Positions 3,001 through 41,715 are shown, counted from the stretch's first letter. The stretch is 64,000 nt of DNA from Oikopleura dioica (GCA_907165135.1 OU015568.1:12276001-12340000); one strand, 5' to 3'. Notes: generated from the letters alone by a model not told the origin. Numbers and translations: made by a program.

Positions 3001-6000
3001 TTCCTTGTGCATGGCAATCTGCCGCTTCTCTGAGCGTCGACGAAGATCTCTCTCTTTCTCTTGTCGTCGTCTCGATTACCGATTTCTAAAACAAAACATT
3101 TTCAGCCTTGTTTTAACGCACACGCCCGCCATTAGTATTTTCAAAGCTGGGCCAGAACTGGAGACAGAAAACAACAGCAACAGCAGATATCTACTGCTTC
3201 TGCTGTCGAGCCTTCTGTTGATGTTTAGATCTGTTTCTTTCACACAGACGATCTCTCTCTGACTCTCTTTCTTTCTCGTGGTTTTTTCGATTTTCCTTTT
3301 TCAATATTTTTCTTTGGTAGCAGTCTCTTTTGGTTCGTGAACCGGCGAGCCAAGCGCGCCATCGTTGAAAGCCAGGTTCGCTTAAAAAGCAGCACGTCCG
3401 CGCGCGCTTCGCCCCGCGCCTTCGATCTCGCTTTTGGTTCGAAAGTGCGGGCCGAATGTTCCCGTGCGGGCCACTGCGGACCACGGCGACTTCGGTGCGG
3501 GTCGGGTCCGCTGGCGGCGCGGGCGAGGCAACGCGCCATAAGGACATTGAACCGGGAGGCTCGCTTTGGAAGTCACTCTCAAAGGCGCGGTTAAGAAGCG
3601 AGAAGAGCTTCGAGGCGTAGGCGGACGGGAGCAGTCGGGCGATGACGGGAGAGACTGCGCCGTTGCACGCGCCGAGGAGCTCACGTCCGCGCTGGAGATG
3701 ATCCTCGGCGACCAATCGCGCCTGAGCAGGGGCGGCACTTGATCTTCTGAAACTTCAAGTGCAACGCTCTGAGCACACGCCAGACCTTACCTATTCAACC
3801 ATTTACCAGGCTAGTAGATGAACATTATCGATGGCTCACATAAGAGCGAGCCCACCACACCAGATTTGGACCCATGCTCAAGTTCACGGCTCTTGGGGTC
3901 GTCCAGATTTCACAACGACGGTTGTTGAATTATCCTCACGTGTGCCTCGACCTCCAGAACAATTAAGACCTGTGTTTTCACCCCGAGCGGACGGAAAGTT
4001 TTTCTTTCGAGGGTTAGTTGGGGTTCATTATTTCGACACTAGTAAATAATCTGACTTCCTTATTTTGAATACAAATAGCTTATGCAAAATAATTTGTTCT
4101 TGTGGGTTTAACCCGGAATATCAAAATAAACAGATAAGAAATTGTAAATTCTAGGTAAAAATCTCAATCTCTTATCAGAAGAATTGCAGGAAAATTCGAC
4201 ATTTACCTTATTTTTTGACGCTACTGTAATTAAACTCGCTTCAATCAATTTGAAAGTATCTTTCTTTTCAAATCAATTATGAGCTGCTGAAGGGGTCGGC
4301 GGTTGTTTTTGATCTCTAAATTTCAACACAATTTCGAATTCAAGACTTTCGATTTCTTCACCAATCCGCAATAGAACTGGTGTGGTATGTGTTGATTTAC
4401 ATTGATGAACTCCTGAAAACGCCGGTACTAACGCGCGGATACGCCTGGTGCGCTGAATAATTTGATCGAAATCCTCATTGAATTAAGAATAAATCGACGT
4501 TTCTTTCAATAGCTACGGTTTCTCTTGAGAATAAGACGCAAATTCAAAGTTCAAAAAAACGTGTTTTCTCATTTCGTCTATTTTTTAATAAATGTATTTT
4601 TTGTGTTTCCGCCGGAAATATGTATATTTTAAGAAACAGTCTGATTACTGTATTTATCTACCCGAAAATTGTTGAAATATTTCTTCAAAGAAGAGGCTAA
4701 ATTTCATGCACAACGGCAATTGTTTAATATGCCATCAAGGTAGGGTAGTTAAACGAAGGAAATAGACTAAAGCTGACTTTATGTATAGGTTTAAGGTAAT
4801 TCTGATGGAGACCTTTCAAGAGGCTCCTTATCGGCGGGAGCGCAACTCAGCAATCGAGCGCGGAGCTGACGTGGATACGACTTGAGGAGACTTTCCCGGA
4901 TCCAATTTTAGAAAAAATATATTACTGATTTATTTCTAATAACTTTTGATTGACGCGCTGGCTAAATTAACTAGTGCATATTTATAATAAGAAATCAATG
5001 AAGATGGATCTTGGATCCTCGTCGACCTTCTTTTTTGCCGGCACAGACGCGAGCTGTGGTCAGCTTCTTCTTCAGACTTAATTAGTTGAAATAAAAAATT
5101 ATTTGCCCTTGCGAGGAGCCAGCGGTTTCGGGGAGCGCACCTTCTCGATAAGCCACCTCGTAAATCATTAATTTATTAGTAATGAACTTCGACAAGAGTC
5201 AGCAGAATTCGCCTTTGACCTGGCGCGCTGATAATCGCTGAAATTTCACTCTTCAAAGGAAATTCAACGAAGGCGGAACTTCCTCGCCGGATGCGCGTAG
5301 TCAACTGTTCATCTCTGGCTTCCGTTACGAGCCGTTTTGAAGTCTGGCCGTCCTTTTTTGTTGACAAAGTAGCTAAATAATTTAGACGGTCGTTTTTACA
5401 TTCTCAGAAGCTACAATCGACAGGCAGTCTGCTTCCGTGACCGCAATTATTCTGATATTATTCCGTCACATTTCAGCGGGTTCAATCGTCTTCCTGTCCA
5501 GGTTGAGTTCAGCGGGCGTCTGTTAATCGCGAAATTTATTGAAGCCTATAAACACGTTACGTGTTCGCCTTCTCATTTTCAAGGTTCAATATTGAAGAAG
5601 AAAAGGGAAAATTTCACCTTCATCGTAATTGCTTCATTTATCAATGGAATAGTGTATAATCAAAATGGAACTCTTAGTAGCATTTGAAAATTCCCGCATG
5701 AGCCATTTATTTCCTGTAAAACCGGGGCTCTTTGAAGCACGAGTGTCTAAAACACACCTCGTTTATTCTGAGAACTCACAGATTCGCCAAGTTCAAGAGC
5801 CAGAAATCCTTGAGACAAAGCTCTTCTCTTTGCTGAGAGGCTTTTGTTTTCGCAGACTCTCTCATTGTGAAGTAGTGAGTTTACCAGTCTACGAAGGAAC
5901 TTACTGACCCCAGTCGGTATGGTATAATTTTTGGTTGGAACAATAAAACCTCAAGCTGGTCTAGCTCGACCGCGCTAGAGTTTAAGCCTATTGTTGACTG

Positions 6001-6125
6001 CAGTTGCTCGTTTTTGACAATGAAACTTAGTGATGATGCTTTCATTGCGCATCAGCACTAATTCGAAGGTATAAAAAATCACTTTATTCAGCGAGTATGG
6101 ATATAACAGCTTGCAAAGGATACAC

Positions 6126-6971
6126 TTAGTTTAGCAGGCAAGACTCATAAGTAGGCACCATGTACTTGATATTGATGAATGCATCTGGACCACCGTGCTT
6201 CTCGAACGCCTCGAGGGTCTCTTGGATCAATTCTCTAGAATACAGTCAGTCACTTGTTTACTGGCTTGTTACTGGCTTACCCGATGTTCTCCCGCTTTTG
6301 CTGCGAGTAGTCGATTCCGTCGCCGCTGTTGAGGTTCATGTTTTTGAAAATGTTCAGGATGGGGAGAATCTGGCGGTAGTAGGGAACCAAAGCTTCGCCA
6401 ACGATATCGGCAGAGATGACGAGGTGCTGGAGGACCTTCAGTGTCGTGCAGATGGTCGGTCGGCATCGCGTGTTCAGAGCGTTTTTAATCGGAATGATCA
6501 GCTGGGGAATAACTAAAGAATAGTACTCAATATTCTATTGCTGAAAAGGAAAGTCTTACCTGGAAGAATTTTCGATCCACCATGCTCGAGCATATCATGA
6601 ACTCCTTGTCTAGCAAAGAATTCATATGGGTGCGTTGTTTCGCTATTGAAAACAGTAACATAACGTGTCAAGCAAAAGTTTCTTACCATAAGCCATCGAA
6701 AAAGAGTGGCAAATAATGGTGATAGTCAAGCTTCTCGATCTCTACTTTCCATGCGATTCGATTTCCTTTTGTATCGTGCTCAAGGGCGATGGGGAAATCT
6801 CCTCGCTCATAAAATTTTCGGAAAGAGGTGGGACCTAGATTAAATTCTTATTTGTGACTTCCGAAAGGAGATCTTACCGCTCTGTCGTTTTTTGAAGGCG
6901 CCAGCGGTAGGTGGGCCGATGATCTGCGCTTTGGGGCTCCTTGATTTGATAGTGAATCCTTCGGTCTCCAT
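6126..6971 (-). CDS. PACRG: Parkin co-regulated gene protein (axonemal inner-junction protein), multi-exon
   Basis: Spliced translation gives METEGFTIK...[53 protein letters not shown] and [17 protein letters not shown], nearly identical to PACRG as I recall it. GT-AG introns; ATG at 6971, TAA at 6126-6128. Confidence 0.95.
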
Positions 6972-7162
6972 CCCACCTGCTAGATACTGTCAAATGTTGA
7001 AAAAAATCTCCCGCGAAAGAAGGGAAAAAACGAAAAAAGATCTTACCTTTTCCGGTTTTTTATTTAAACTGATTTCAAAAACCGAGATTTGGCAACAACA
7101 AGGACCCTGTTCTAGAAAATCGACGAATAAGTTGAGTTTATTATGCAGTTTTTTTATTGTGG

Positions 7163-9966
7163 TTAAATTGATGATACGGATCCGTTGGCGATTTTTGAGT
7201 GCGCAATCGCCACTTTTTTCTGCCTCTTCATTTCTTCTTTCATCGATCTTCGTATTGAAATTTGCTTTGGCGCGTTTTTCGAAAGATTTGTTACGTTTTT
7301 CCACACTTGATCAATTTATCAATGGTTTTAAGATTAAATTGCTGTACCTTTTAGTATGTCGACGTACCACTGCTCTTGCTCGAAGCCCATTTCGAAAGAG
7401 AAAGTGATGTCCCGCGAATGAGTTTTAATAAGAATCGCCTCAGTGTCTTTTGGCTTGATCTTTTCCACCGAGATGATCTCGTCGATGGGAATGACGATCT
7501 GCTCGGCCGGTATCTCGAGCCGATTCGGAAAGAGAAAAATCTCTCTTTTGGACCACGTTGGGTTGAACCTTTTTTGGGGGTCAATTATCTGGAATTATTG
7601 AATCGCAAAGAAGATACCTGGAATCGGCGGCTTTTGAGCAAACTCCTCGGATTAAAATGTCTTGAAATTCGGTTTCTTGAAGCTGATCGCCGCTGTTATC
7701 TTCGTTTTGACTCTTTTCAATCGCATTTTGAGTGGACAAGTCAAAGACAGTGTCTATTTAGGTTTCTATGATGCTATACTAACGTGAGAGATAAGAAACA
7801 TAAGAAACCATAGCTAGAATTTCTTTTCGCCATTTAGTCTTGCTTATAAACTCGTATTTTGCTGAACTATTTCCGATGCATTTTGAGTCTTGTTCCAAAC
7901 AAGCAATTCTGTCCACTATTTCTTCCTCTAGCAACCATTGATGATTTGAAAGGATATTGTCAAACCTGTTCTTGTTGAGACGATAATTGGTGCATCAATT
8001 GTTTTAAGCTCCATTTGTGACCAGTTTGTCTGATGGAAGATCTTCTCCGTTCGGATTTGATCGACTTTCAGGCGCGCACCTGGGTCGCTGCTTCTTTTGG
8101 ATTCGTTTTGTGCAACAATAGTTACCCAAATCAATATTTGACGTACTTATATCAAAAAAGGTGGCTCGACAATGTTTTGTAAAAATCCAAGCTTAGCATT
8201 TTTGCGAGCAAAATTTGCAAACCAAGTGGCGAGACTTGATTCAATCTGTCAAGCAATTTATACGATATTTGCTCCGTGATAGGGTCCGTCACTGAATGAA
8301 ACAGGTTAGGTTTGTCTTCTGCTGCTGTGTCTTACCTATTGGCGACTCTCCATAAAACAAGTAATAAATTGTGCAGCCAAGAGAGAAGATATCACACGAT
8401 TTGCTGTAGCTGTCGGAGATAACTTCCGGTGCTTTGAACTGAGGGGAACCGACGTCGCCAGTGATTTCATTGTTGTTAGAGCAGATGACAGCGTCGAAGA
8501 AGTTACTGATCATGCAATGTCCGGTGCCTGAGAGTCGGAATGAAAAATCAATTTTCTAAAGCTCAATTTGATTTTGGCTTTTTGTCCGTTCCTGAGATGA
8601 GAATCGACCTCGGACAAATGTTTCTGTGGCAGATATTATGCTGGTGTATGAACTCCAGGCCAATGACCATCTCGCACGTGTAGAAGAGCACCTCCTCCAA
8701 GGTGAATCCACCGCGCTGATTATGCAGCTTCAGCAAATCGCCCCCGTCGCCAAAGTCATGGACTACAATCGCAATTATCCATCATTCTGCTACACTACTT
8801 AAGACTTACTGAATAAGATGGTCGAGCAATCCTGGAATATGTAGCTGACTTGGTCGATAAAAGCACCTTTCGTGCAAGATACGCTCATTAGAAACTCGTT
8901 TATTTTCTATGACCAACAAATCATCAACGATCATTAACAACTGAGTTATGTTCCAGACATAAGCGAGCCACGTCCCTGAGAAGAGTCAAAATGTCAAAAT
9001 AGTTTTCTAGCTGATCGAAGTCTGGCATTTTGTCTTTTGCCATAATTCGAAGCGCGTATGTTGCATTCGTATCCGTTTTCGTTACTTTGTAAACGTCACC
9101 TTTTAGAATTGGTCATTAAAAGATCAAGACTAATCGTCTTGAGTTCGCTTTCGCCTGGGTTTTTAATTGAGTTAGCACGAGTTCAATCGGTGTTGATTTA
9201 GTTAGAGTAATGACCATGACGAAATGGCCAGATTCGATCTTGGAATAATTGCTAAATGTGTCCAAATTTACTCGCAAATCAAGCTCTAGGCATTTCCACT
9301 GAAGGTAGACTGTCGATGAATATGAATCTTGGAAGACGTCCCAGCCGAGATAGCTCAATAACGAGTACAGTAGATGATAGTCTGAGGGGATATACTTAAG
9401 AACCTTCTCCGCGCTCCATTTAAATAGCTTATCCCATTCCTGATGAAAATACAATTTCTTCATTTAGCTCCAGTTTTCTTATAAAAACCTCAATCTGTTG
9501 AGAGTCCAGCTCAAATCCTCAAAAAAGCTCTTACTAAATACTCTTCAGACTTGACAAGAAACCTTTAAGCTCGGTAGATTTATACACATTTCGGAGCACA
9601 TAAACTAACTCGTTGAGGTATCGTGTGATTCCAATCGGTCGTATTTTATGCTGAAATTGCACTTGAACGAAATGAGCTAAAAGCAAAACTTGCTTGTTTC
9701 TTGCTGAGCTCAAAAATCTCCATAAGTCCTCTGGTAGTACGATCTTCTTGAAGAGCTCTTTTGATGAGTTTGGTTCCGATTGCATCTTCCCACACATCGT
9801 CGAAGTTCCACAGATGATTTTGTTCAAGAAATCTCTATATCAAAGAAATAAAGTTACAATAGTTGCTGGTGCATCTTACCAGAACAACAGATCTTACAGA
9901 AGTCGGAGGTAAGTCCAGTGATTTAGCTCTTTTGCCACGTTTCGATACACGTCTCAAAATATCCAT
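7163..9966 (-). CDS. GRK2/GRK3 (beta-ARK)-like protein with RH, kinase-fold and PH domains; probable pseudokinase
   Basis: Hand-spliced segments align colinearly with GRK2: LPPTSVRSVV (N-term); QWKCLELDLRVNLDTF; GDVYKVTKTDTNATYALRIM; YIFQDCSTILFIHDFGDGGDL; FYTCEMVIGLEFIH; DIFSLGCTIYYLFYGESP; YEFISKTKWRKEIL; and PH-domain IFLFPNRLE. Some exon joins are unresolved. Confidence 0.85.
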
Positions 9967-37140: not shown

Positions 37141-38280
37141 CTCGTAGTAATTATTTCTCTTTCGAACCTTCCGTGGCTTCGGAAAAAGCGAAGGTCGACG
37201 GCGTAAACTTCAAAAAGTTATTATTTAAAGTGCGACAATTTTTCAAAAAGAGAGAGATCTTGAATTTGTGGTAAAGGGGAGGTCATTTGTTTGAGTTTTT
37301 TACGACTATTGTTTACATGCAGCGAGTTGGGGGTCAGTTAGGCCCGGTAAGAGCGGGTTTTTTTACTGATAGGAAAGATATTTCGGGTGTGTTTATTGTG
37401 CATGGTGTACCGTGCACGCTACAGAAGATTTCTAAGTAATCAAATATAACGACGATTTAGATTCATTTTCCTACAAATCATATCACAGCGGCCAATTTAG
37501 GAAGAATTCTCCTAACCTGGTACTCATGCTTCAAAAATTTCTCTTGAAGTAAGAAAAAAACTTCTTGTCTGACCGCTCACGCGACAAATATCCAATTACC
37601 AAAAAAGAGCGAAAAGAGAAAGGAATTTTGTATGAAAAGATGCCTCAACAAAAAATAAGGAATCCAGCGCATCTCCTGTTAAATAAAAATTCTCAACTTT
37701 TTGTGCGGCTAAAATAATAATGGGATAATCCAGGCGAAACTTCCGTTCACGAGTTATTTCAGTAGAAGCTCACCTGTTTTCTTGTGGTTTATGATTTCTT
37801 TAAAATATGTCTCTCAAAATTTCTTGGGGAAAATTTTGATCGTTATTTTACGCGGCCAGAAATTCTGCGAAGATTAAATATTTGGTGCGAAGACTGCGCC
37901 TTTAATTGCTTTAGAATTCGGACACTCGTATTTTATTATTCTCGTGGTTCGTTTCATTCATACTCATATGATACATTTTCAATAGAAAACAGGATTTCTG
38001 CATCGAGGTGGGAGCAAAATCGACTTTTAAAAAAATTTATTGATAATTTACTCGATTTCTCAATTTTTTTTCGTAAATAAGAATAAAATCAGAATGACGG
38101 GGCAGCAGACAAAATGAACGTCAGATAATGATCCCAATTGCCATTCAATTTCGTCGAGTCAATCATTACTGCAAATTGCATTATGTGCTTTAATCAAGTC
38201 GGCATCTAAAAAAACAAAAAGATGTGACATCTTAGATGTCACATCTCGTGATATCAACTTACCAGAAAACTGCGTTCTCT

Positions 38281-40457
38281 CTAGTGAAGAGTTAAAGAAT
38301 ATGCTTGGGGAAGAAGATGCCACTTTTCTGTTTCCATATTGAATTGCTCATTTGCTAAAGTAATAAACTCGTTGTTGTCACCATAATAGACATAATTGTT
38401 GTAACAGTTGTAGCATTCATTCATCATTGAGCAAGAAGCGTAGTAAGGTCGGTCGAGAGGAATTCTGATTTGCGAGCCAGAATGGTCGATGAGGGTGTTT
38501 TGGAGGATGAATTCGCAGTTTACGACTCGGTCGAGCACCATTTGATGGAAAATTATTGATCCGTCTGGATTTTGGTAGGCGCCTGTCACGGTCAGAGGTC
38601 GGGTGAAAGTGAAGTTTTGGTGGAGTAGTACTTAAATTGTTAACAAAAAGGATTATGAAATGATAAGGGTACCCCCTTTCGTCACACCTTTTACGAAATT
38701 GAAATCGCCATGAACCACGTCAGACATGTTCATGATAGATTCCCAACCACTTTCACTCAAATAAGTTTCAAATTTTAGTCTTTTGAGAAGCAACTCAATT
38801 TCGTTTTCTTGAAATTCCTGCTCTTCGAATTTCGGATTAAGATTAAATCCAGCCAAACTCCGCGGATAAATAACCATTGTCAAAATAATGAAAATTTTTT
38901 CAAGAGTAAAACATCTTTCCATTTCTAATTCATCAGCTTTCAAATCATTCTTGATGGCCCATCTCAAAAGAACTGCGACTGAGATGGGGACACAGAGATT
39001 GGTTTCTTTTTGGTTTAAAACATTTTTCGTCAGATTTTTAAAATCGACATTGATTTGTCTTGTGAGTATTTGTTTAAGATTAGCCATTGCTGAAGATTTA
39101 GTCAGATTTGGATCGTCAAAGGAAAGCTGACGAGACGTGTTTTTTAAGGAAATAACTTTTGACATGTTGCGAATTTCGTAGACTGATGGAGAGTAGTATG
39201 AAAGCCACTCAGCACAACAAGCCTACCAGACATTTTTCTTATTGAGGGCTTGAAAATAGACTCACCTCCAATTCCTTTTTGACTATTTCTTTTTCGTGCT
39301 TTTCTATAGGATTGAATAGAAGAGCCCACGCTGTTTTCCATTCGCAAAGTACGAAAACATGTGTTGGTGATCCGGACGGAAGGGCGTTGTTAATAAGTTG
39401 AAGGTTTCCCGAAAAAGCAGCAGTTCCTGCGTCTTATCAGCACAGTGTTATAATTTCAACAAATCTTGAAAACTTACATAAAAATTGATAATCTCTATAT
39501 TTGCTCCCTCTCCTTGCATAACCCATTTCACGATAGCTCCTTCTTCCTGTTTTCTCTTCAATAATACCAAAGTCAATCACTTTGGCTACTCCTTTGTCTA
39601 ATAAAATATTTTCCGGCTTCTGATCGTGATGTAAGATTCCAATTTTCTCCAGATATTGTTGTCCTCTTATAACTCCTATCGCTATGTTCTTCCTTTCTTC
39701 CAAATTTAAATTTTCTTTTGCCAATTTTCTTCTCAAGTCGGAGTCACAACTTTCCATAATTGTTATCCATCCTATGCAGTCTTCTCTCTCCTTGTCATTT
39801 TTTAAGAAGATCTCGATGTTGACGAAATTTTTAATTACATTTCGATGAAATGGAATAACGTCTGCGTCGTCGGTTGTCATGTCTTTTGCAATTTTATAAT
39901 CTAAAAATCAGCCTCTACCGAATCATAAAGATATTACCTTTCGAAAGATGAATATCGAATTCAACCTCTTCGTCCTTCGTAAACAGCGCCGAATCGAAAG
40001 CTTGCACCCGAACAGCAACTTCCAAGCCTCCATCTGAGTTTCTCCATTTTTCCATTTGAAATTTTTCTTTAAGAACAATTGCCTCTCCTCCAGCAGAGAT
40101 AATATTCTGTTGCAGAGATTTATCGAGGATCCATTCTCCAGTTTCTTCTTTTAATTCTGATCGTTGAATTCTGCGTCCTTTCAACTGTGGATTTTTCTCT
40201 AAGATACAATTTTGAAAAAATGTAGTTTTCCATTCTTCTTTGTGCCATCCATTATCAATTTTTCCTGTATTTTCTCCAAAACTAACCTCCTTCCATTCAG
40301 CACAACCATCATCTTTAAATTCGCTTCTCTCCACCGACAAAATTAATCGGTCCAAATCATCTCTGCTCGTCGTTCTTTTTAATTTCTTTTCAAAATCTTG
40401 TAGCCATTTCTCAACAGCTTCTTTTGTCAAGTCTCTTGGATACGCTGTCACTTGCAT
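38281..40457 (-). CDS. Protein kinase-like domain fused to a C-terminal papain-like cysteine peptidase domain
   Basis: Five open segments are joined in frame by four short GT-AG introns. Kinase motifs: SAGGEAIV, VAVRV, HHDQKPENILL, DFG, YAGTAAF. Then NQKETNLCVPIS, FHQMVL and FILQNT. Upstream exons are possible. Confidence 0.8.
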
Positions 40458-40922
40458 TTCATGAGATAAATACTTTGCTGAGTGACAGTATTTCTAATCT
40501 TTGCACAACGAACTTGTTTCTATTGTAAAACGCACCTCAATTGCAATCATTCGTTTGTTTTCTGACGTCATATGGCTGGTTATGCCCGTTTTCTCAAACA
40601 ATTCTCCCGTTCTCATTTCCAAGCCCAGGTAATTTTTTTGAAAATAGGTGTACGCGTACGTATCTTTCTATTACAAAAAATTATTCTATCAAAGCTAAGA
40701 TGACTCCTCATTGATTTCATCTTTGTTAGCCGCAACAAAATTAAACTGCTATAAATATTTTGCTCTTTTATGAAATTATCAACTGCCAGTATTGCAGAAT
40801 TGGCAACTCTTAGTGATTCTCTAGAATAAAAAGTAGCGTACGAATCAATATTAAAATAAAGCTCATGTTTGAGTTTTGTCAGAGACCGAAACAGAGCTTT
40901 TTTCTGAATCCAGATGAGAATA

Positions 40923-41580
40923 CCTTTTGGGATATGGACATGGAAAGACCTGTCTATCTTCCACTCCTTCTTTTTCAAGTTGGGATCGGGCTTGTTCATG
41001 TAATATTCTTCATTTGGTTCTGGTATACGCACATTTACAAGGTATTTTGAGGAAAATCTACGTTCATTATATGTAAATTTTAGAAAAATACAGAGAAGAA
41101 AGTCCTTGGCGAGTCTCTCGGAGCAGTACCGCCAAAAAAATCGTCAAAACTAGGACAAAAAGAAGCCGAAAAATCGCGAACGTCGAAAGAAGATGTCCGA
41201 ATAAAAATTGATACAGACTCTGAAGAGCTTTCAGGGATTCCGCCAGCGCCATCAGCTGCTCAAATTCGTCAGCGGATTTTGAAGAAACAAGCGAAGAAAA
41301 TGGTTAGCAAAAATCTTAAAGCAAACATTATCAATAATTTAGCGGAGAGCGATGCGAGAGGCAAGAAAAAGGGCGAAGTACGAAAAACTGAAAGAAGCTC
41401 AAGATCAATATGGCACTTTCTCTGACACGTAACAATAAATTTATTATCTGCTTCTCTTTTTCAAGTTTTCTTGCTTTATTTTTCAATAAAAATTGCTTTT
41501 TTACCAGCCCGAGGATATTTATCATATTTTGAGCAGCAGACAGCAAAGAAAGAAGGTAGGATAATGATCCCAATTATGAT
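40923..41580 (+). CDS. Hypothetical single-pass membrane protein with a Lys-rich tail
   Basis: PVYLPLLLFQVGIGLVHVIFFIWFWY TM exon joins in frame via GT-AG to KNTEKKVLGE... and to further charged exons; the ends are uncertain. Confidence 0.5.
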
Positions 41581-41715
41581 TCAATTTTCGTCAAGTCGAT
41601 GGCGATTGAATTATTCGGCGAATAATTTTCTCTTGTCCTTGGAGCCTCTCCTGTCCTCGTCCTTTTTTTTCTTCCCGAGTTGATGAGAGATCCACCGCCG
41701 TGAAGAAGTTGGGAA

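What the first reader, a model, noticed from the sequence alone, without database searches (positions are those of the whole stretch)
38281..40457. Kinase fused to a papain-fold cysteine peptidase with papain-exact catalytic spacing
Seen: four canonical short introns join five open segments into one ORF of roughly 690 aa; the kinase-peptidase join is a 43-nt phase-0 GT-AG intron (KELE|ACCAEW). The C-terminal half has Q-x5-C (NQKETNLC; Cys codon 38992-38994) and H-x15-N (FHQMVL...FILQNT; His 38545-38547, Asn 38497-38499). Known: papain has Q19/C25 and H159/N175, the same two spacings. The kinase keeps the catalytic Asp/Asn (HHDQKPEN) and DFG, but has Arg where the VAIK Lys should be (VAVR) and a RIO/Bud32-like GGEAIV loop. 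Inference: a kinase-protease hybrid, possibly a defence or signalling switch. I know of no characterised animal protein with this architecture, but I could not search for one.
Basis: partly seen in the sequence, partly recalled or inferred. Interest (0 to 1): 0.85.

Follow-up and report, generated by a model that had tools for sequence, protein, structure and literature searches.

The report
Kinase plus papain-fold peptidase gene
This is an intact copy of a large, unstudied gene family of the tunicate Oikopleura dioica, in which one protein joins an unusual protein kinase to a cysteine peptidase of the papain type that no domain database recognises. What the protein does is not known.

Summary
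On the minus strand, five exons (40457-38281) joined by four GT-AG introns of 37, 45, 43 and 57 nt give one 664-aa ORF, not about 690.

- **Kinase half (residues 1-370):** it has a eukaryotic protein kinase fold, shown by a Pfam Pkinase match and a Foldseek probability of 1.0. The nearest structures are IRAK-like. Arg replaces the VAIK Lys in every paralog, while the HxDxKxxN and DFG residues never vary.
- **Peptidase half (residues 371-664):** it matches no sequence profile. An AlphaFold model of the closest full-length paralog matched only papain-like peptidases: all 50 top hits, including C1 and C39 families, with Z up to 9.6.
- **Catalytic residues:** Gln, Cys, His and Asn are nearly invariant across the family (44/45, 45/45, 35/35, 31/34).
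- **Gene model:** the intron positions match an annotated paralog. A Tara metagenome scaffold carries the kinase-peptidase join as one uninterrupted ORF.
- **Selection:** dN/dS on the peptidase exon is about 0.14-0.22.

No RNA read matched this copy, though a paralog is transcribed. Activity, substrates and role are untested. The Bud32/RIO idea is not supported. The scan found this family before, elsewhere in this genome. Plant EDR1/CTR1 is a known precedent for a papain-like domain joined to a kinase.

The parts
39938..40457 (-). Exon 1 (aa 1-173 plus one base). It holds the N-terminal helical extension and the start of the kinase N-lobe. The Gly loop SAGGEA is at 40080-40097. VAVR is at 40008-40019, with Arg150 at 40008-40010.
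   Evidence: aligns with paralogs
39901..39937 (-). Intron 1, 37 nt, GT..AG, phase 1.
   Evidence: same position as intron 1 of the annotated paralog P0080
39478..39900 (-). Exon 2: kinase core. The catalytic loop HHDQKPEN is at 39608-39631 (Asp266 at 39623-39625, Lys268, Asn271). DFG is at 39566-39574. It also holds a basic insert in the activation segment.
   Evidence: Pfam Pkinase E 2e-12, 47.5 bits against a cut-off of 31.7
39433..39477 (-). Intron 2, 45 nt, GTAAGT..AAG. The acceptor is at 39433; the AG five bases further downstream would create a stop codon.
   Evidence: same position as in P0080
39266..39432 (-). Exon 3: end of the kinase C-lobe (GTAAF at 39413-39427, CEWKTAW).
39223..39265 (-). 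Intron 3, 43 nt, GTGAGT..TAG, phase 0. This is the kinase-peptidase join. If it were retained, the frame would stop after 8 codons.
   Evidence: same position as a 45-nt intron in P0080; absent from Tara scaffold L004, where the ORF runs straight through
38688..39222 (-). Exon 4: linker and the helical lobe of the papain-fold domain. Gln441 is at 39010-39012, Cys447 at 38992-38994 and YPRS at 38857-38868.
   Evidence: dN/dS 0.14-0.22
38631..38687 (-). Intron 4, 57 nt, GT..AG, phase 1.
   Evidence: same position as in P0080 and L003
38281..38630 (-). Exon 5: the beta-sheet lobe of the papain-fold domain. His577 is at 38545-38547 and Asn593 at 38497-38499. The stop TAG is at 38281-38283.

Best explanation
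This locus is an intact, singleton copy of a large gene family seen so far only in Oikopleura dioica and in unnamed marine metagenome fragments. It encodes one 664-aa protein with no signal peptide, so it is presumably intracellular. The protein has two enzyme-type domains.

Residues 1-370 are an N-terminal extension plus a divergent eukaryotic protein kinase domain. This domain keeps the catalytic Asp, Lys and Asn and the DFG motif. It carries a family-fixed Arg at the VAIK Lys position and has no long alphaC helix in the model.

Residues 371-664 are a papain-fold (clan CA-like) domain. Cys447 sits at the start of the central helix, Gln441 lies six residues before it, and His577 and Asn593 lie on successive strands of a hairpin, as in papain and C39 peptidases.

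Shown: the gene structure, the two folds (on a paralog 46-48% identical), conservation of both catalytic sets, and purifying selection.

Inferred: the C-terminal domain is an active cysteine peptidase or isopeptidase. The kinase domain binds nucleotide and either phosphorylates substrates or regulates the peptidase allosterically. The two activities are coupled on a shared target or on the protein itself. The high copy number, fast divergence and frequent dead copies fit a signalling or conflict (defence) role, but nothing here tests that.
For: - **Gene model:** one 1995-nt ORF across four GT-AG introns.
- **Collinearity:** the protein aligns end to end with annotated O. dioica proteins, for example P0080 at residues 3-663 against 28-704.
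- **Introns:** all four positions are shared with the P0080 gene.
- **Join without splicing:** Tara metagenome scaffold L004 and contig L005 carry the kinase-peptidase join in one uninterrupted ORF.
- **Kinase:** Pfam Pkinase E 2e-12. A family profile hits DAPK1, BRAF, TTK and CDK9 at about 1e-7. The model has pLDDT 82 and pTM 0.84. Foldseek gives probability 1.0 to eukaryotic kinases. IRAK1 scores Z 13.1. Arg is 33/33, and the catalytic D, K, N and the DFG Asp are each 34/34.
- **Peptidase:** the model has pLDDT 82.5 and pTM 0.78, with Cys as the first residue of helix 47-63. All 50 top VIA hits are papain-like peptidases: xylellain and Der f 1 at Z 9.6, cathepsin B at 9.2, PCAT1, LahT and ComA (C39) at 8.8-9.1. 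The alignments start at model residue 40 against residue 18 of caricain, 22 of cathepsin B and 10 of ComA. That places Gln41 and Cys47 of the model on those enzymes' Gln and Cys; the enzymes' residue numbers are from my own knowledge. ESM Atlas hits are C39-like clusters. Conservation is Q 44/45, C 45/45, H 35/35, N 31/34.
- **Selection:** dN/dS is 0.14-0.22 on exon 4 against the two nearest relatives.
- **Family size and range:** 251 clusters at E <= 0.01. Among the 120 listed, every named one is O. dioica.
- **Expression of the family:** a paralog is transcribed in oligo-dT RNA runs.
Against: - No enzymatic activity has been tested.
- No RNA read at 90% identity or more lies on this copy in about 1.5 Gb from each of three oligo-dT runs and 1.3 Gb of one single-cell run. 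Whether those runs come from the same lineage as the window is unknown.
- The structures were predicted for paralog P0080, not for the window protein.
- The fold Z-scores (9-10) are only modestly above the tool's usual background best of 7-8. Foldseek against the PDB found nothing significant.
- No sequence profile links the C-terminal domain to any peptidase family.
- A Lys-to-Arg change at the VAIK position usually cripples kinases (my own knowledge).
- Asn is replaced in a few divergent members.
Confidence: 0.7

Rival explanations
1. The kinase half is a pseudokinase. It would bind ATP or a partner and act as a regulatory or scaffold module for the peptidase, without transferring phosphate. 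Mammalian KSR works this way and also has Arg at the VAIK Lys position.
For: Arg at the beta3 position is invariant, 33/33. The model shows no long alphaC helix between beta3 and beta4, and the usual alphaC Glu column is variable. KSR1 is among the profile hits. That KSR has Arg for Lys is my own knowledge.
Against: The catalytic Asp, Lys and Asn and the DFG Asp are each 34/34 invariant. That is more than a pure scaffold would need. In the window copy all of them are intact.
Confidence: 0.35
2. The papain-fold domain is not a protease of ordinary proteins. It could be a deconjugating enzyme for ubiquitin or a ubiquitin-like modifier, or another Cys-His acyl-transfer enzyme such as a transglutaminase, deamidase or acyltransferase.
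For: The protein has no signal peptide. ATG4, UfSP, ZUFSP, Josephin and coronavirus papain-like proteases also appear among the fold hits at Z 6-7.7. The papain fold is known to host such activities (PMC10318531).
Against: The best matches are C1 and C39 endopeptidases. The Gln-x5-Cys and His-x15-Asn spacings are those of papain and C39 (papain and C39 spacings from my own knowledge). The Z differences of 1-2 are too small to decide.
Confidence: 0.3
3. This particular copy is silent, a young pseudogene-to-be, even though the family is functional.
For: No reads lie on it while a paralog is read in the same runs. Many family copies are dead: L001 has an in-frame stop and GFG for DFG, and earlier scan notes report copies hit by transposons.
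Against: It has 664 codons without a stop, all four splice sites intact and every catalytic residue of both domains present. dN/dS is about 0.14-0.22 against its nearest relatives. The lineage and tissue coverage of the RNA runs are unknown.
Confidence: 0.2
4. These are two adjacent genes, a kinase and a peptidase, wrongly joined by assuming a 43-nt intron.
For: If intron 3 is retained, the kinase frame stops after 8 codons, and a Met (MSKVISLK) lies 23 codons into exon 4. No transcript of this copy was seen.
Against: The intron position and phase are the same in the annotated fused paralog. Dozens of annotated O. dioica proteins carry both halves. L004 and L005 have the join in one continuous ORF in assembled DNA. 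Sequence is conserved across the join.
Confidence: 0.05

Closest known systems
Papain family (MEROPS C1, clan CA): papain, cathepsin B, Der p 1/Der f 1, xylellain
   Same: These are the best fold matches, at Z 9.2-9.6 over 152-163 residues. The Cys sits at the N-terminus of the central helix with Gln six residues before it, and His and Asn are 16 apart on a beta hairpin (papain numbering from my own knowledge).
   Different: There is no Pfam PF00112 match. Sequence identity is about 10%. There is no signal peptide or recognisable C1 prodomain, and no Trp two residues after the Asn. The domain is fused behind a kinase and is presumably cytosolic.
C39 double-glycine peptidase domains of bacteriocin ABC transporters (PCAT1, ComA, LahT)
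   Same: It shares the compact papain fold, matched at Z 8.8-9.1 and rmsd about 3.1 A, covering nearly the whole C39 domain. The ESM Atlas neighbours are C39-like clusters. The Gln-x5-Cys spacing and the 16-residue gap from His to the third residue are the same (my own knowledge).
   Different: C39 uses Asp as the third residue, is bacterial and sits in front of an ABC transporter. There is no PF03412 or PF13529 match. The Oikopleura domain is about twice as long, with extra helices and strands.
EDR1 domain (Pfam PF14381) fused to a kinase domain; known to me as the plant Raf-like kinases EDR1 and CTR1
   Same: It is a known case of a papain-like domain and a protein kinase domain in one polypeptide (PMC10318531). 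The kinase there is of the TKL group, and the nearest structures to this kinase are also TKL.
   Different: The domain order is reversed, with EDR1 in front of the kinase there (my own knowledge). No PF14381 match was found for any of 50 members. The paper places the EDR1 domain near C71 and C93. There is no evidence of common descent.
KSR (kinase suppressor of Ras) pseudokinase
   Same: It has Arg in place of the VAIK Lys while the rest of the catalytic loop and DFG are kept (my own knowledge). KSR1 appears among the profile hits.
   Different: KSR has no peptidase domain and has a normal alphaC helix. The similarity is confined to the generic kinase core.
IRAK/Pelle, RIPK and plant receptor-like kinases (TKL group)
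   Same: These are the top structural neighbours of the kinase model: IRAK1 at Z 13.1, IRAK3 at 12.5, SOBIR1 and IRAK4 at 12.4.
   Different: They are effectively tied with many other kinase groups, down to Z about 11. There is no death domain or other IRAK hallmark. The N-lobe is atypical.

Membership tests
Eukaryotic protein kinase superfamily (Pfam PF00069) | Profile match above the curated threshold | tested here: met
   Exon 2 scores 47.5 bits against a cut-off of 31.7, E 2e-12.
Eukaryotic protein kinase superfamily (Pfam PF00069) | Bilobal kinase fold | tested here: met
   A model of paralog P0080:1-445 gives Foldseek probability 1.0 to many kinases and VIA Z up to 13.1. The window protein itself was not modelled.
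Eukaryotic protein kinase superfamily (Pfam PF00069) | Catalytic loop Asp, Lys and Asn, and DFG Asp | tested here: met
   HHDQKPEN and DFG are present. Each residue is 34/34 in the family.
Eukaryotic protein kinase superfamily (Pfam PF00069) | VAIK Lys on beta3 paired with an alphaC Glu | tested here: not met
   Arg150 replaces the Lys, and Arg is 33/33 in the family. The model has no long alphaC helix.
RIO / Bud32 atypical kinases | Profile match to RIO1 (PF01163) or Bud32 (TIGR03724) | tested here: not met
   RIO1 scores 12.9 bits against a cut-off of 22. arch_bud32 scores 13.4 bits against 125. Both matches cover only the catalytic loop.
Papain-like cysteine peptidases (clan CA fold) | Papain fold: a helical lobe with Cys at the helix N-terminus plus a beta-sheet lobe carrying His | tested here: met
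   In the model of P0080:430-707 (pLDDT 82.5), Cys47 starts helix 47-63 and His189 lies in strand 185-197. All 50 top VIA hits are papain-like.
Papain-like cysteine peptidases (clan CA fold) | Conserved Gln, Cys, His and Asn/Asp | tested here: met
   Q 44/45, C 45/45, H 35/35, N 31/34. All four are present in the window copy.
Papain-like cysteine peptidases (clan CA fold) | Cys, His and Asn side chains adjacent in three dimensions | not testable with these tools
Only secondary-structure positions could be compared.
Papain-like cysteine peptidases (clan CA fold) | Peptidase activity | not testable with these tools
   This needs a bench assay.
MEROPS C1 (Pfam PF00112) | Profile match | tested here: not met
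   No PF00112 hit for the window exons or for 50 members. One member hits Peptidase_C1_2 at E 0.0036.
MEROPS C39 (Pfam PF03412 / PF13529) | Profile match; Asp as the third residue; ABC-transporter context | tested here: not met
   No profile hit. The third residue is Asn. The domain is fused to a kinase.
EDR1/CTR1-type papain-like domain plus kinase | PF14381 domain N-terminal to a Raf-like kinase | tested here: not met
   No PF14381 hit. The domain order is reversed.
Oikopleura kinase-peptidase family (unnamed) | End-to-end alignment with both halves and shared intron positions | tested here: met
   The window protein aligns with P0080 over 3-663 against 28-704 at 46% identity. Four intron positions are shared.

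The most novel reading that the evidence does not exclude
The family is a chordate-lineage invention: a two-enzyme effector in which a kinase with a non-canonical ATP site and a new kind of papain-fold peptidase act together. For example, phosphorylation could gate cleavage or deconjugation, or self-cleavage could release an active kinase. On this reading it has been amplified to dozens of fast-evolving copies because it takes part in immunity against marine viruses or in a genomic or reproductive conflict, in an animal that has lost much of the standard immune toolkit (that loss is from my own knowledge).
Probability: 0.2. Interest if true: 0.8.

Novelty: new variant of a known kind. Interest (0 to 1): 0.55.

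Why it matters
The public records call these proteins only 'protein kinase domain-containing' or 'uncharacterized'. Nothing on the family turned up in the paper library. The C-terminal half would define a new sequence family within the papain-like clan, invisible to Pfam, NCBIfam and PDB sequence searches.

Both catalytic sets are conserved across a large, fast-diverging family. That argues for two working enzymes, and it gives a natural test case for kinases that use Arg where Lys is thought to be indispensable. Oikopleura dioica is a laboratory animal, so the function can be tested.

This locus is useful as an intact copy, uninterrupted by transposons, with every catalytic residue present.

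Tried and rejected
- **Sequence profiles on the C-terminal half:** nothing from Pfam, NCBIfam, PADLOC, or PDB sequences with a single exon or the family profile.
- **Foldseek against the PDB:** no significant hit, only weak papain-like rows such as staphopain and a tegument-like DUB.
- **Foldseek against viral structures:** nothing significant, so no support for a viral origin.
- **Language-model atlas:** only weak leads to Peptidase_C1, scores 0.87-0.92 with low feature sharing.
- **RNA evidence:** one call on four runs found no reads from this copy. I could not lay a control gene to learn whether the runs are of the same lineage.
- **Transcript contigs:** the Logan contigs I checked were genomic, not transcripts.
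- **The window's own protein:** I looked for it in the databases so it could be folded by reference. The nearest entry is only 72% identical, so a paralog was folded instead.
- **Mobile-element cargo:** no flanking terminal or long repeats, and no second copy in the window.
- **Bud32/RIO origin of the kinase:** rejected.
- **Neighbouring ORFs:** no informative domains.

Full report
**Observation.** Reading the minus strand of 37900-40900 and splicing by script gives five exons: 40457-39938, 39900-39478, 39432-39266, 39222-38688 and 38630-38281. Four GT-AG introns of 37, 45, 43 and 57 nt join them. The CDS is 1995 nt and encodes 664 aa with one terminal stop. The 43-nt phase-0 intron at KELE|ACCAEW is also as described. 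The length estimate of about 690 aa is a little high. Intron 2 must use the acceptor at 39433, because the next AG would create a TGA. The two spacing motifs alone are weak evidence: 3.2% of shuffles of the C-terminal 294 aa show both in the right order.

**Organism and family.** A search with exon 4 against 1.84 billion representative proteins gave 66 hits, one of them a false repeat match. A search with a full-length hit gave 44 proteins. A profile of the C-terminal domain gave 251 clusters at E <= 0.01. Every named protein among those listed is an 'unnamed protein product' of Oikopleura dioica, from both the Bergen (CBY...) and Okinawa (OKI2018_I69) annotations. The rest are unnamed ENA, JGI and Logan contigs, including Tara Oceans metagenome scaffolds. 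Public annotation sees only the kinase domain. Earlier notes of this scan had already reported this family at other places in the same genome. I treated them as leads and re-tested the claims here. The window holds only this one copy, with no flanking terminal repeats. The nearest database protein is 72% identical over a fragment, so the window's own product is not among the proteins these searches returned.

**Gene model.** The 664-aa product aligns end to end with annotated paralogs, for example P0080 at residues 3-663 against 28-704 with 46% identity. Mapping P0080 onto its own locus (L002) shows that the window's four introns lie at the same codon positions and phases as P0080's introns 1-4, including the kinase-peptidase join. 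P0080 has a fifth intron that the window lacks. Independently of any splicing assumption, Tara metagenome scaffold L004 carries the join in one continuous ORF with no extra residues. Contig L005 carries the kinase C-lobe, the join and the whole peptidase domain in one 449-aa ORF. The two-gene reading is therefore unlikely.

**Kinase half.**
- Exon 2 matches Pfam Pkinase at E 2e-12, above threshold.
- A family profile hits canonical kinases (DAPK1, BRAF, TTK, CDK9, KSR1) at about 1e-7, but only from alphaE to DFG.
- An AlphaFold model of P0080:1-445 with a 39-row family alignment that included the window's exons has pLDDT 82 and pTM 0.84.
- Foldseek gives probability 1.0 to many kinases. The VIA search puts IRAK1 (Z 13.1), IRAK3, SOBIR1, IRAK4, ACVR2 and a RIPK on top, effectively tied with other groups near Z 11.
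- Across the family the beta3 Arg is 33/33. The catalytic-loop Asp, Lys and Asn and the DFG Asp are each 34/34.
- The Arg is therefore a fixed family trait, not decay of this copy.
- The model shows Arg in the middle of beta3 and no long alphaC helix.
- RIO1 and Bud32 profiles score far below threshold and not on the Gly loop, so that idea is not supported.
- The window copy differs from the consensus by a 9-residue insert between beta2 and beta3, and by SAGGEA and GTAAF in place of SEGGEA and GTPGF.

**Peptidase half.** No sequence method recognises this half. An AlphaFold model of P0080:430-707, built on a 50-row alignment that included the window's exons 4 and 5, has pLDDT 82.5 and pTM 0.78. 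Foldseek against the PDB found nothing significant. The exhaustive VIA search returned 50 of 50 top hits from papain-like peptidases:
- xylellain and Der f 1 at Z 9.6;
- cathepsin B at 9.2;
- PCAT1, LahT and ComA (C39 domains) at 8.8-9.1;
- the pseudomurein endoisopeptidase PeiR at 8.9;
- staphopain at 8.6;
- ATG4 and UfSP at 7.7.

The Z values are only modestly above the tool's stated background of 7-8. The uniformity of the list is the stronger argument. The ESM Atlas search gave C39-like clusters and Josephin.

In the model the Cys is the first residue of the long helix 47-63. The His lies in strand 185-197, and the Asn ends the next strand, 200-205, after a two-residue turn. From memory, this is the same layout as papain's HAVAAVGYGPNYILIKN. 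The alignments begin at model residue 40 against caricain 18, cathepsin B 22, Der f 1 28 and ComA 10. By my knowledge of those enzymes' numbering, that puts the model's Gln41 and Cys47 on their oxyanion Gln and catalytic Cys.

Conservation is Q 44/45, C 45/45, H 35/35 and N 31/34. Further near-invariant motifs (YPRS, NLNP, GW) are specific to this family.

**Selection and expression.**
- Codon comparison of exon 4 with the two nearest relatives (metagenome contigs L003 and L001, 68-70% amino-acid identity) gives dN/dS of 0.14-0.22. dS is near saturation at 0.9-1.7, so the ratio is approximate.
- L001 is itself a dead copy, with an in-frame stop and GFG for DFG.
- One Okinawa member (P0123) has lost the kinase catalytic loop and the peptidase His.
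- Laying three oligo-dT RNA runs and one single-cell run carrying the same species label on 37900-40900 found no read that matches this copy.
- Those runs gave 3 to 15 partial hits each. The most frequent (9, 9 and 2 reads in the three oligo-dT runs) share 33 nt at 39671-39703 with the window and then run on unlike it.
- Their consensus translates to RTKLKEQKLSLEERKNIAIGVRRGIDYLTEI, a family member.
- So the family is transcribed, but expression of this copy is not shown. I could not check whether the runs are of the same lineage.

**Mechanism.** Shown: one ORF with two folds, two conserved catalytic sets and purifying selection. Inferred: the C-terminal domain is a working Cys peptidase or isopeptidase. 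The kinase domain binds nucleotide, and it either phosphorylates or, like KSR, regulates allosterically. The two act on a common target or on the protein itself. The absence of a signal peptide points to an intracellular role. The many divergent and dead copies fit a signalling or conflict role, but nothing here tests that.

**Comparison and novelty.** The fold places the C-terminal half in the papain-like clan, nearest C1 and C39, but it fails the profile test for both. A papain-like domain joined to a kinase is already known: the EDR1 domain (PF14381) is often fused to a PF07714 kinase domain, according to PMC10318531. From my own knowledge these are the plant kinases EDR1 and CTR1, and there the papain-like domain comes first, the reverse of this gene. 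No sequence link to that domain was found here. I therefore rate this as a new variant of a known kind: a new papain-fold sequence family fused behind an atypical kinase, restricted as far as seen to Oikopleura. No paper on it was found.

Noticed in passing
window 38206-38263 (minus strand), just after the stop codon: About 18 nt after the TAG there is a GTAAGT...TTTTTTTAG stretch of about 57 nt that looks like an intron in the 3' untranslated region. Inside it is a perfect 11-nt inverted repeat (38245-38235 and 38231-38221, with a 3-nt loop) followed by a run of T.
   Followed up: no
window 38113-38151 and 41549-41587: A 39-nt direct repeat, 82% identical, brackets the gene about 130 nt past its stop and about 1.1 kb before its start. 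It may be chance, or a remnant of a small repeat or of a duplication boundary.
   Followed up: no
L001 (ENA metagenome contig, 1266 nt): This is the nearest relative of the window copy, 71.5% identical at the DNA level. It is a dead copy, with an in-frame stop in the peptidase exon and GFG in place of DFG.
   Followed up: partly
P0123 (OKI2018_I69 chr1.g3529) and P0112 (CBY24129.1): These divergent family members have lost the kinase catalytic loop and DFG. In P0123 the peptidase His is also gone, while Gln and Cys are kept. They may be pseudoenzyme offshoots or faulty gene models.
   Followed up: no
L002 (O. dioica FN654551.1), 3001-5363 and 5894-7766: Two family members (P0080 and P0088) lie in tandem on the same strand, unlike the singleton in this window. 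The fifth intron in the P0080 annotation has no clear GT..AG ends in my rough mapping.
   Followed up: partly
L004 (Tara scaffold), around ORF residues 140-160: The ORF reads straight through what looks like an in-frame retained intron 2 (SLCKSLSKNSSIIFL). It has no intron at the kinase-peptidase join. So intron content differs between copies or species.
   Followed up: partly
L006 (Logan contig SRR5819968_83234), 295-642: A glycoside hydrolase family 9 (cellulase-type) gene fragment lies next to a family member on a genomic contig.
   Followed up: no
window 39671-39703: RNA reads from a paralog share 33 nt here with two fixed differences (39683 T>G, 39686 G>T). They show that at least one family member is polyadenylated and expressed in the bulk RNA runs.
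   Followed up: yes
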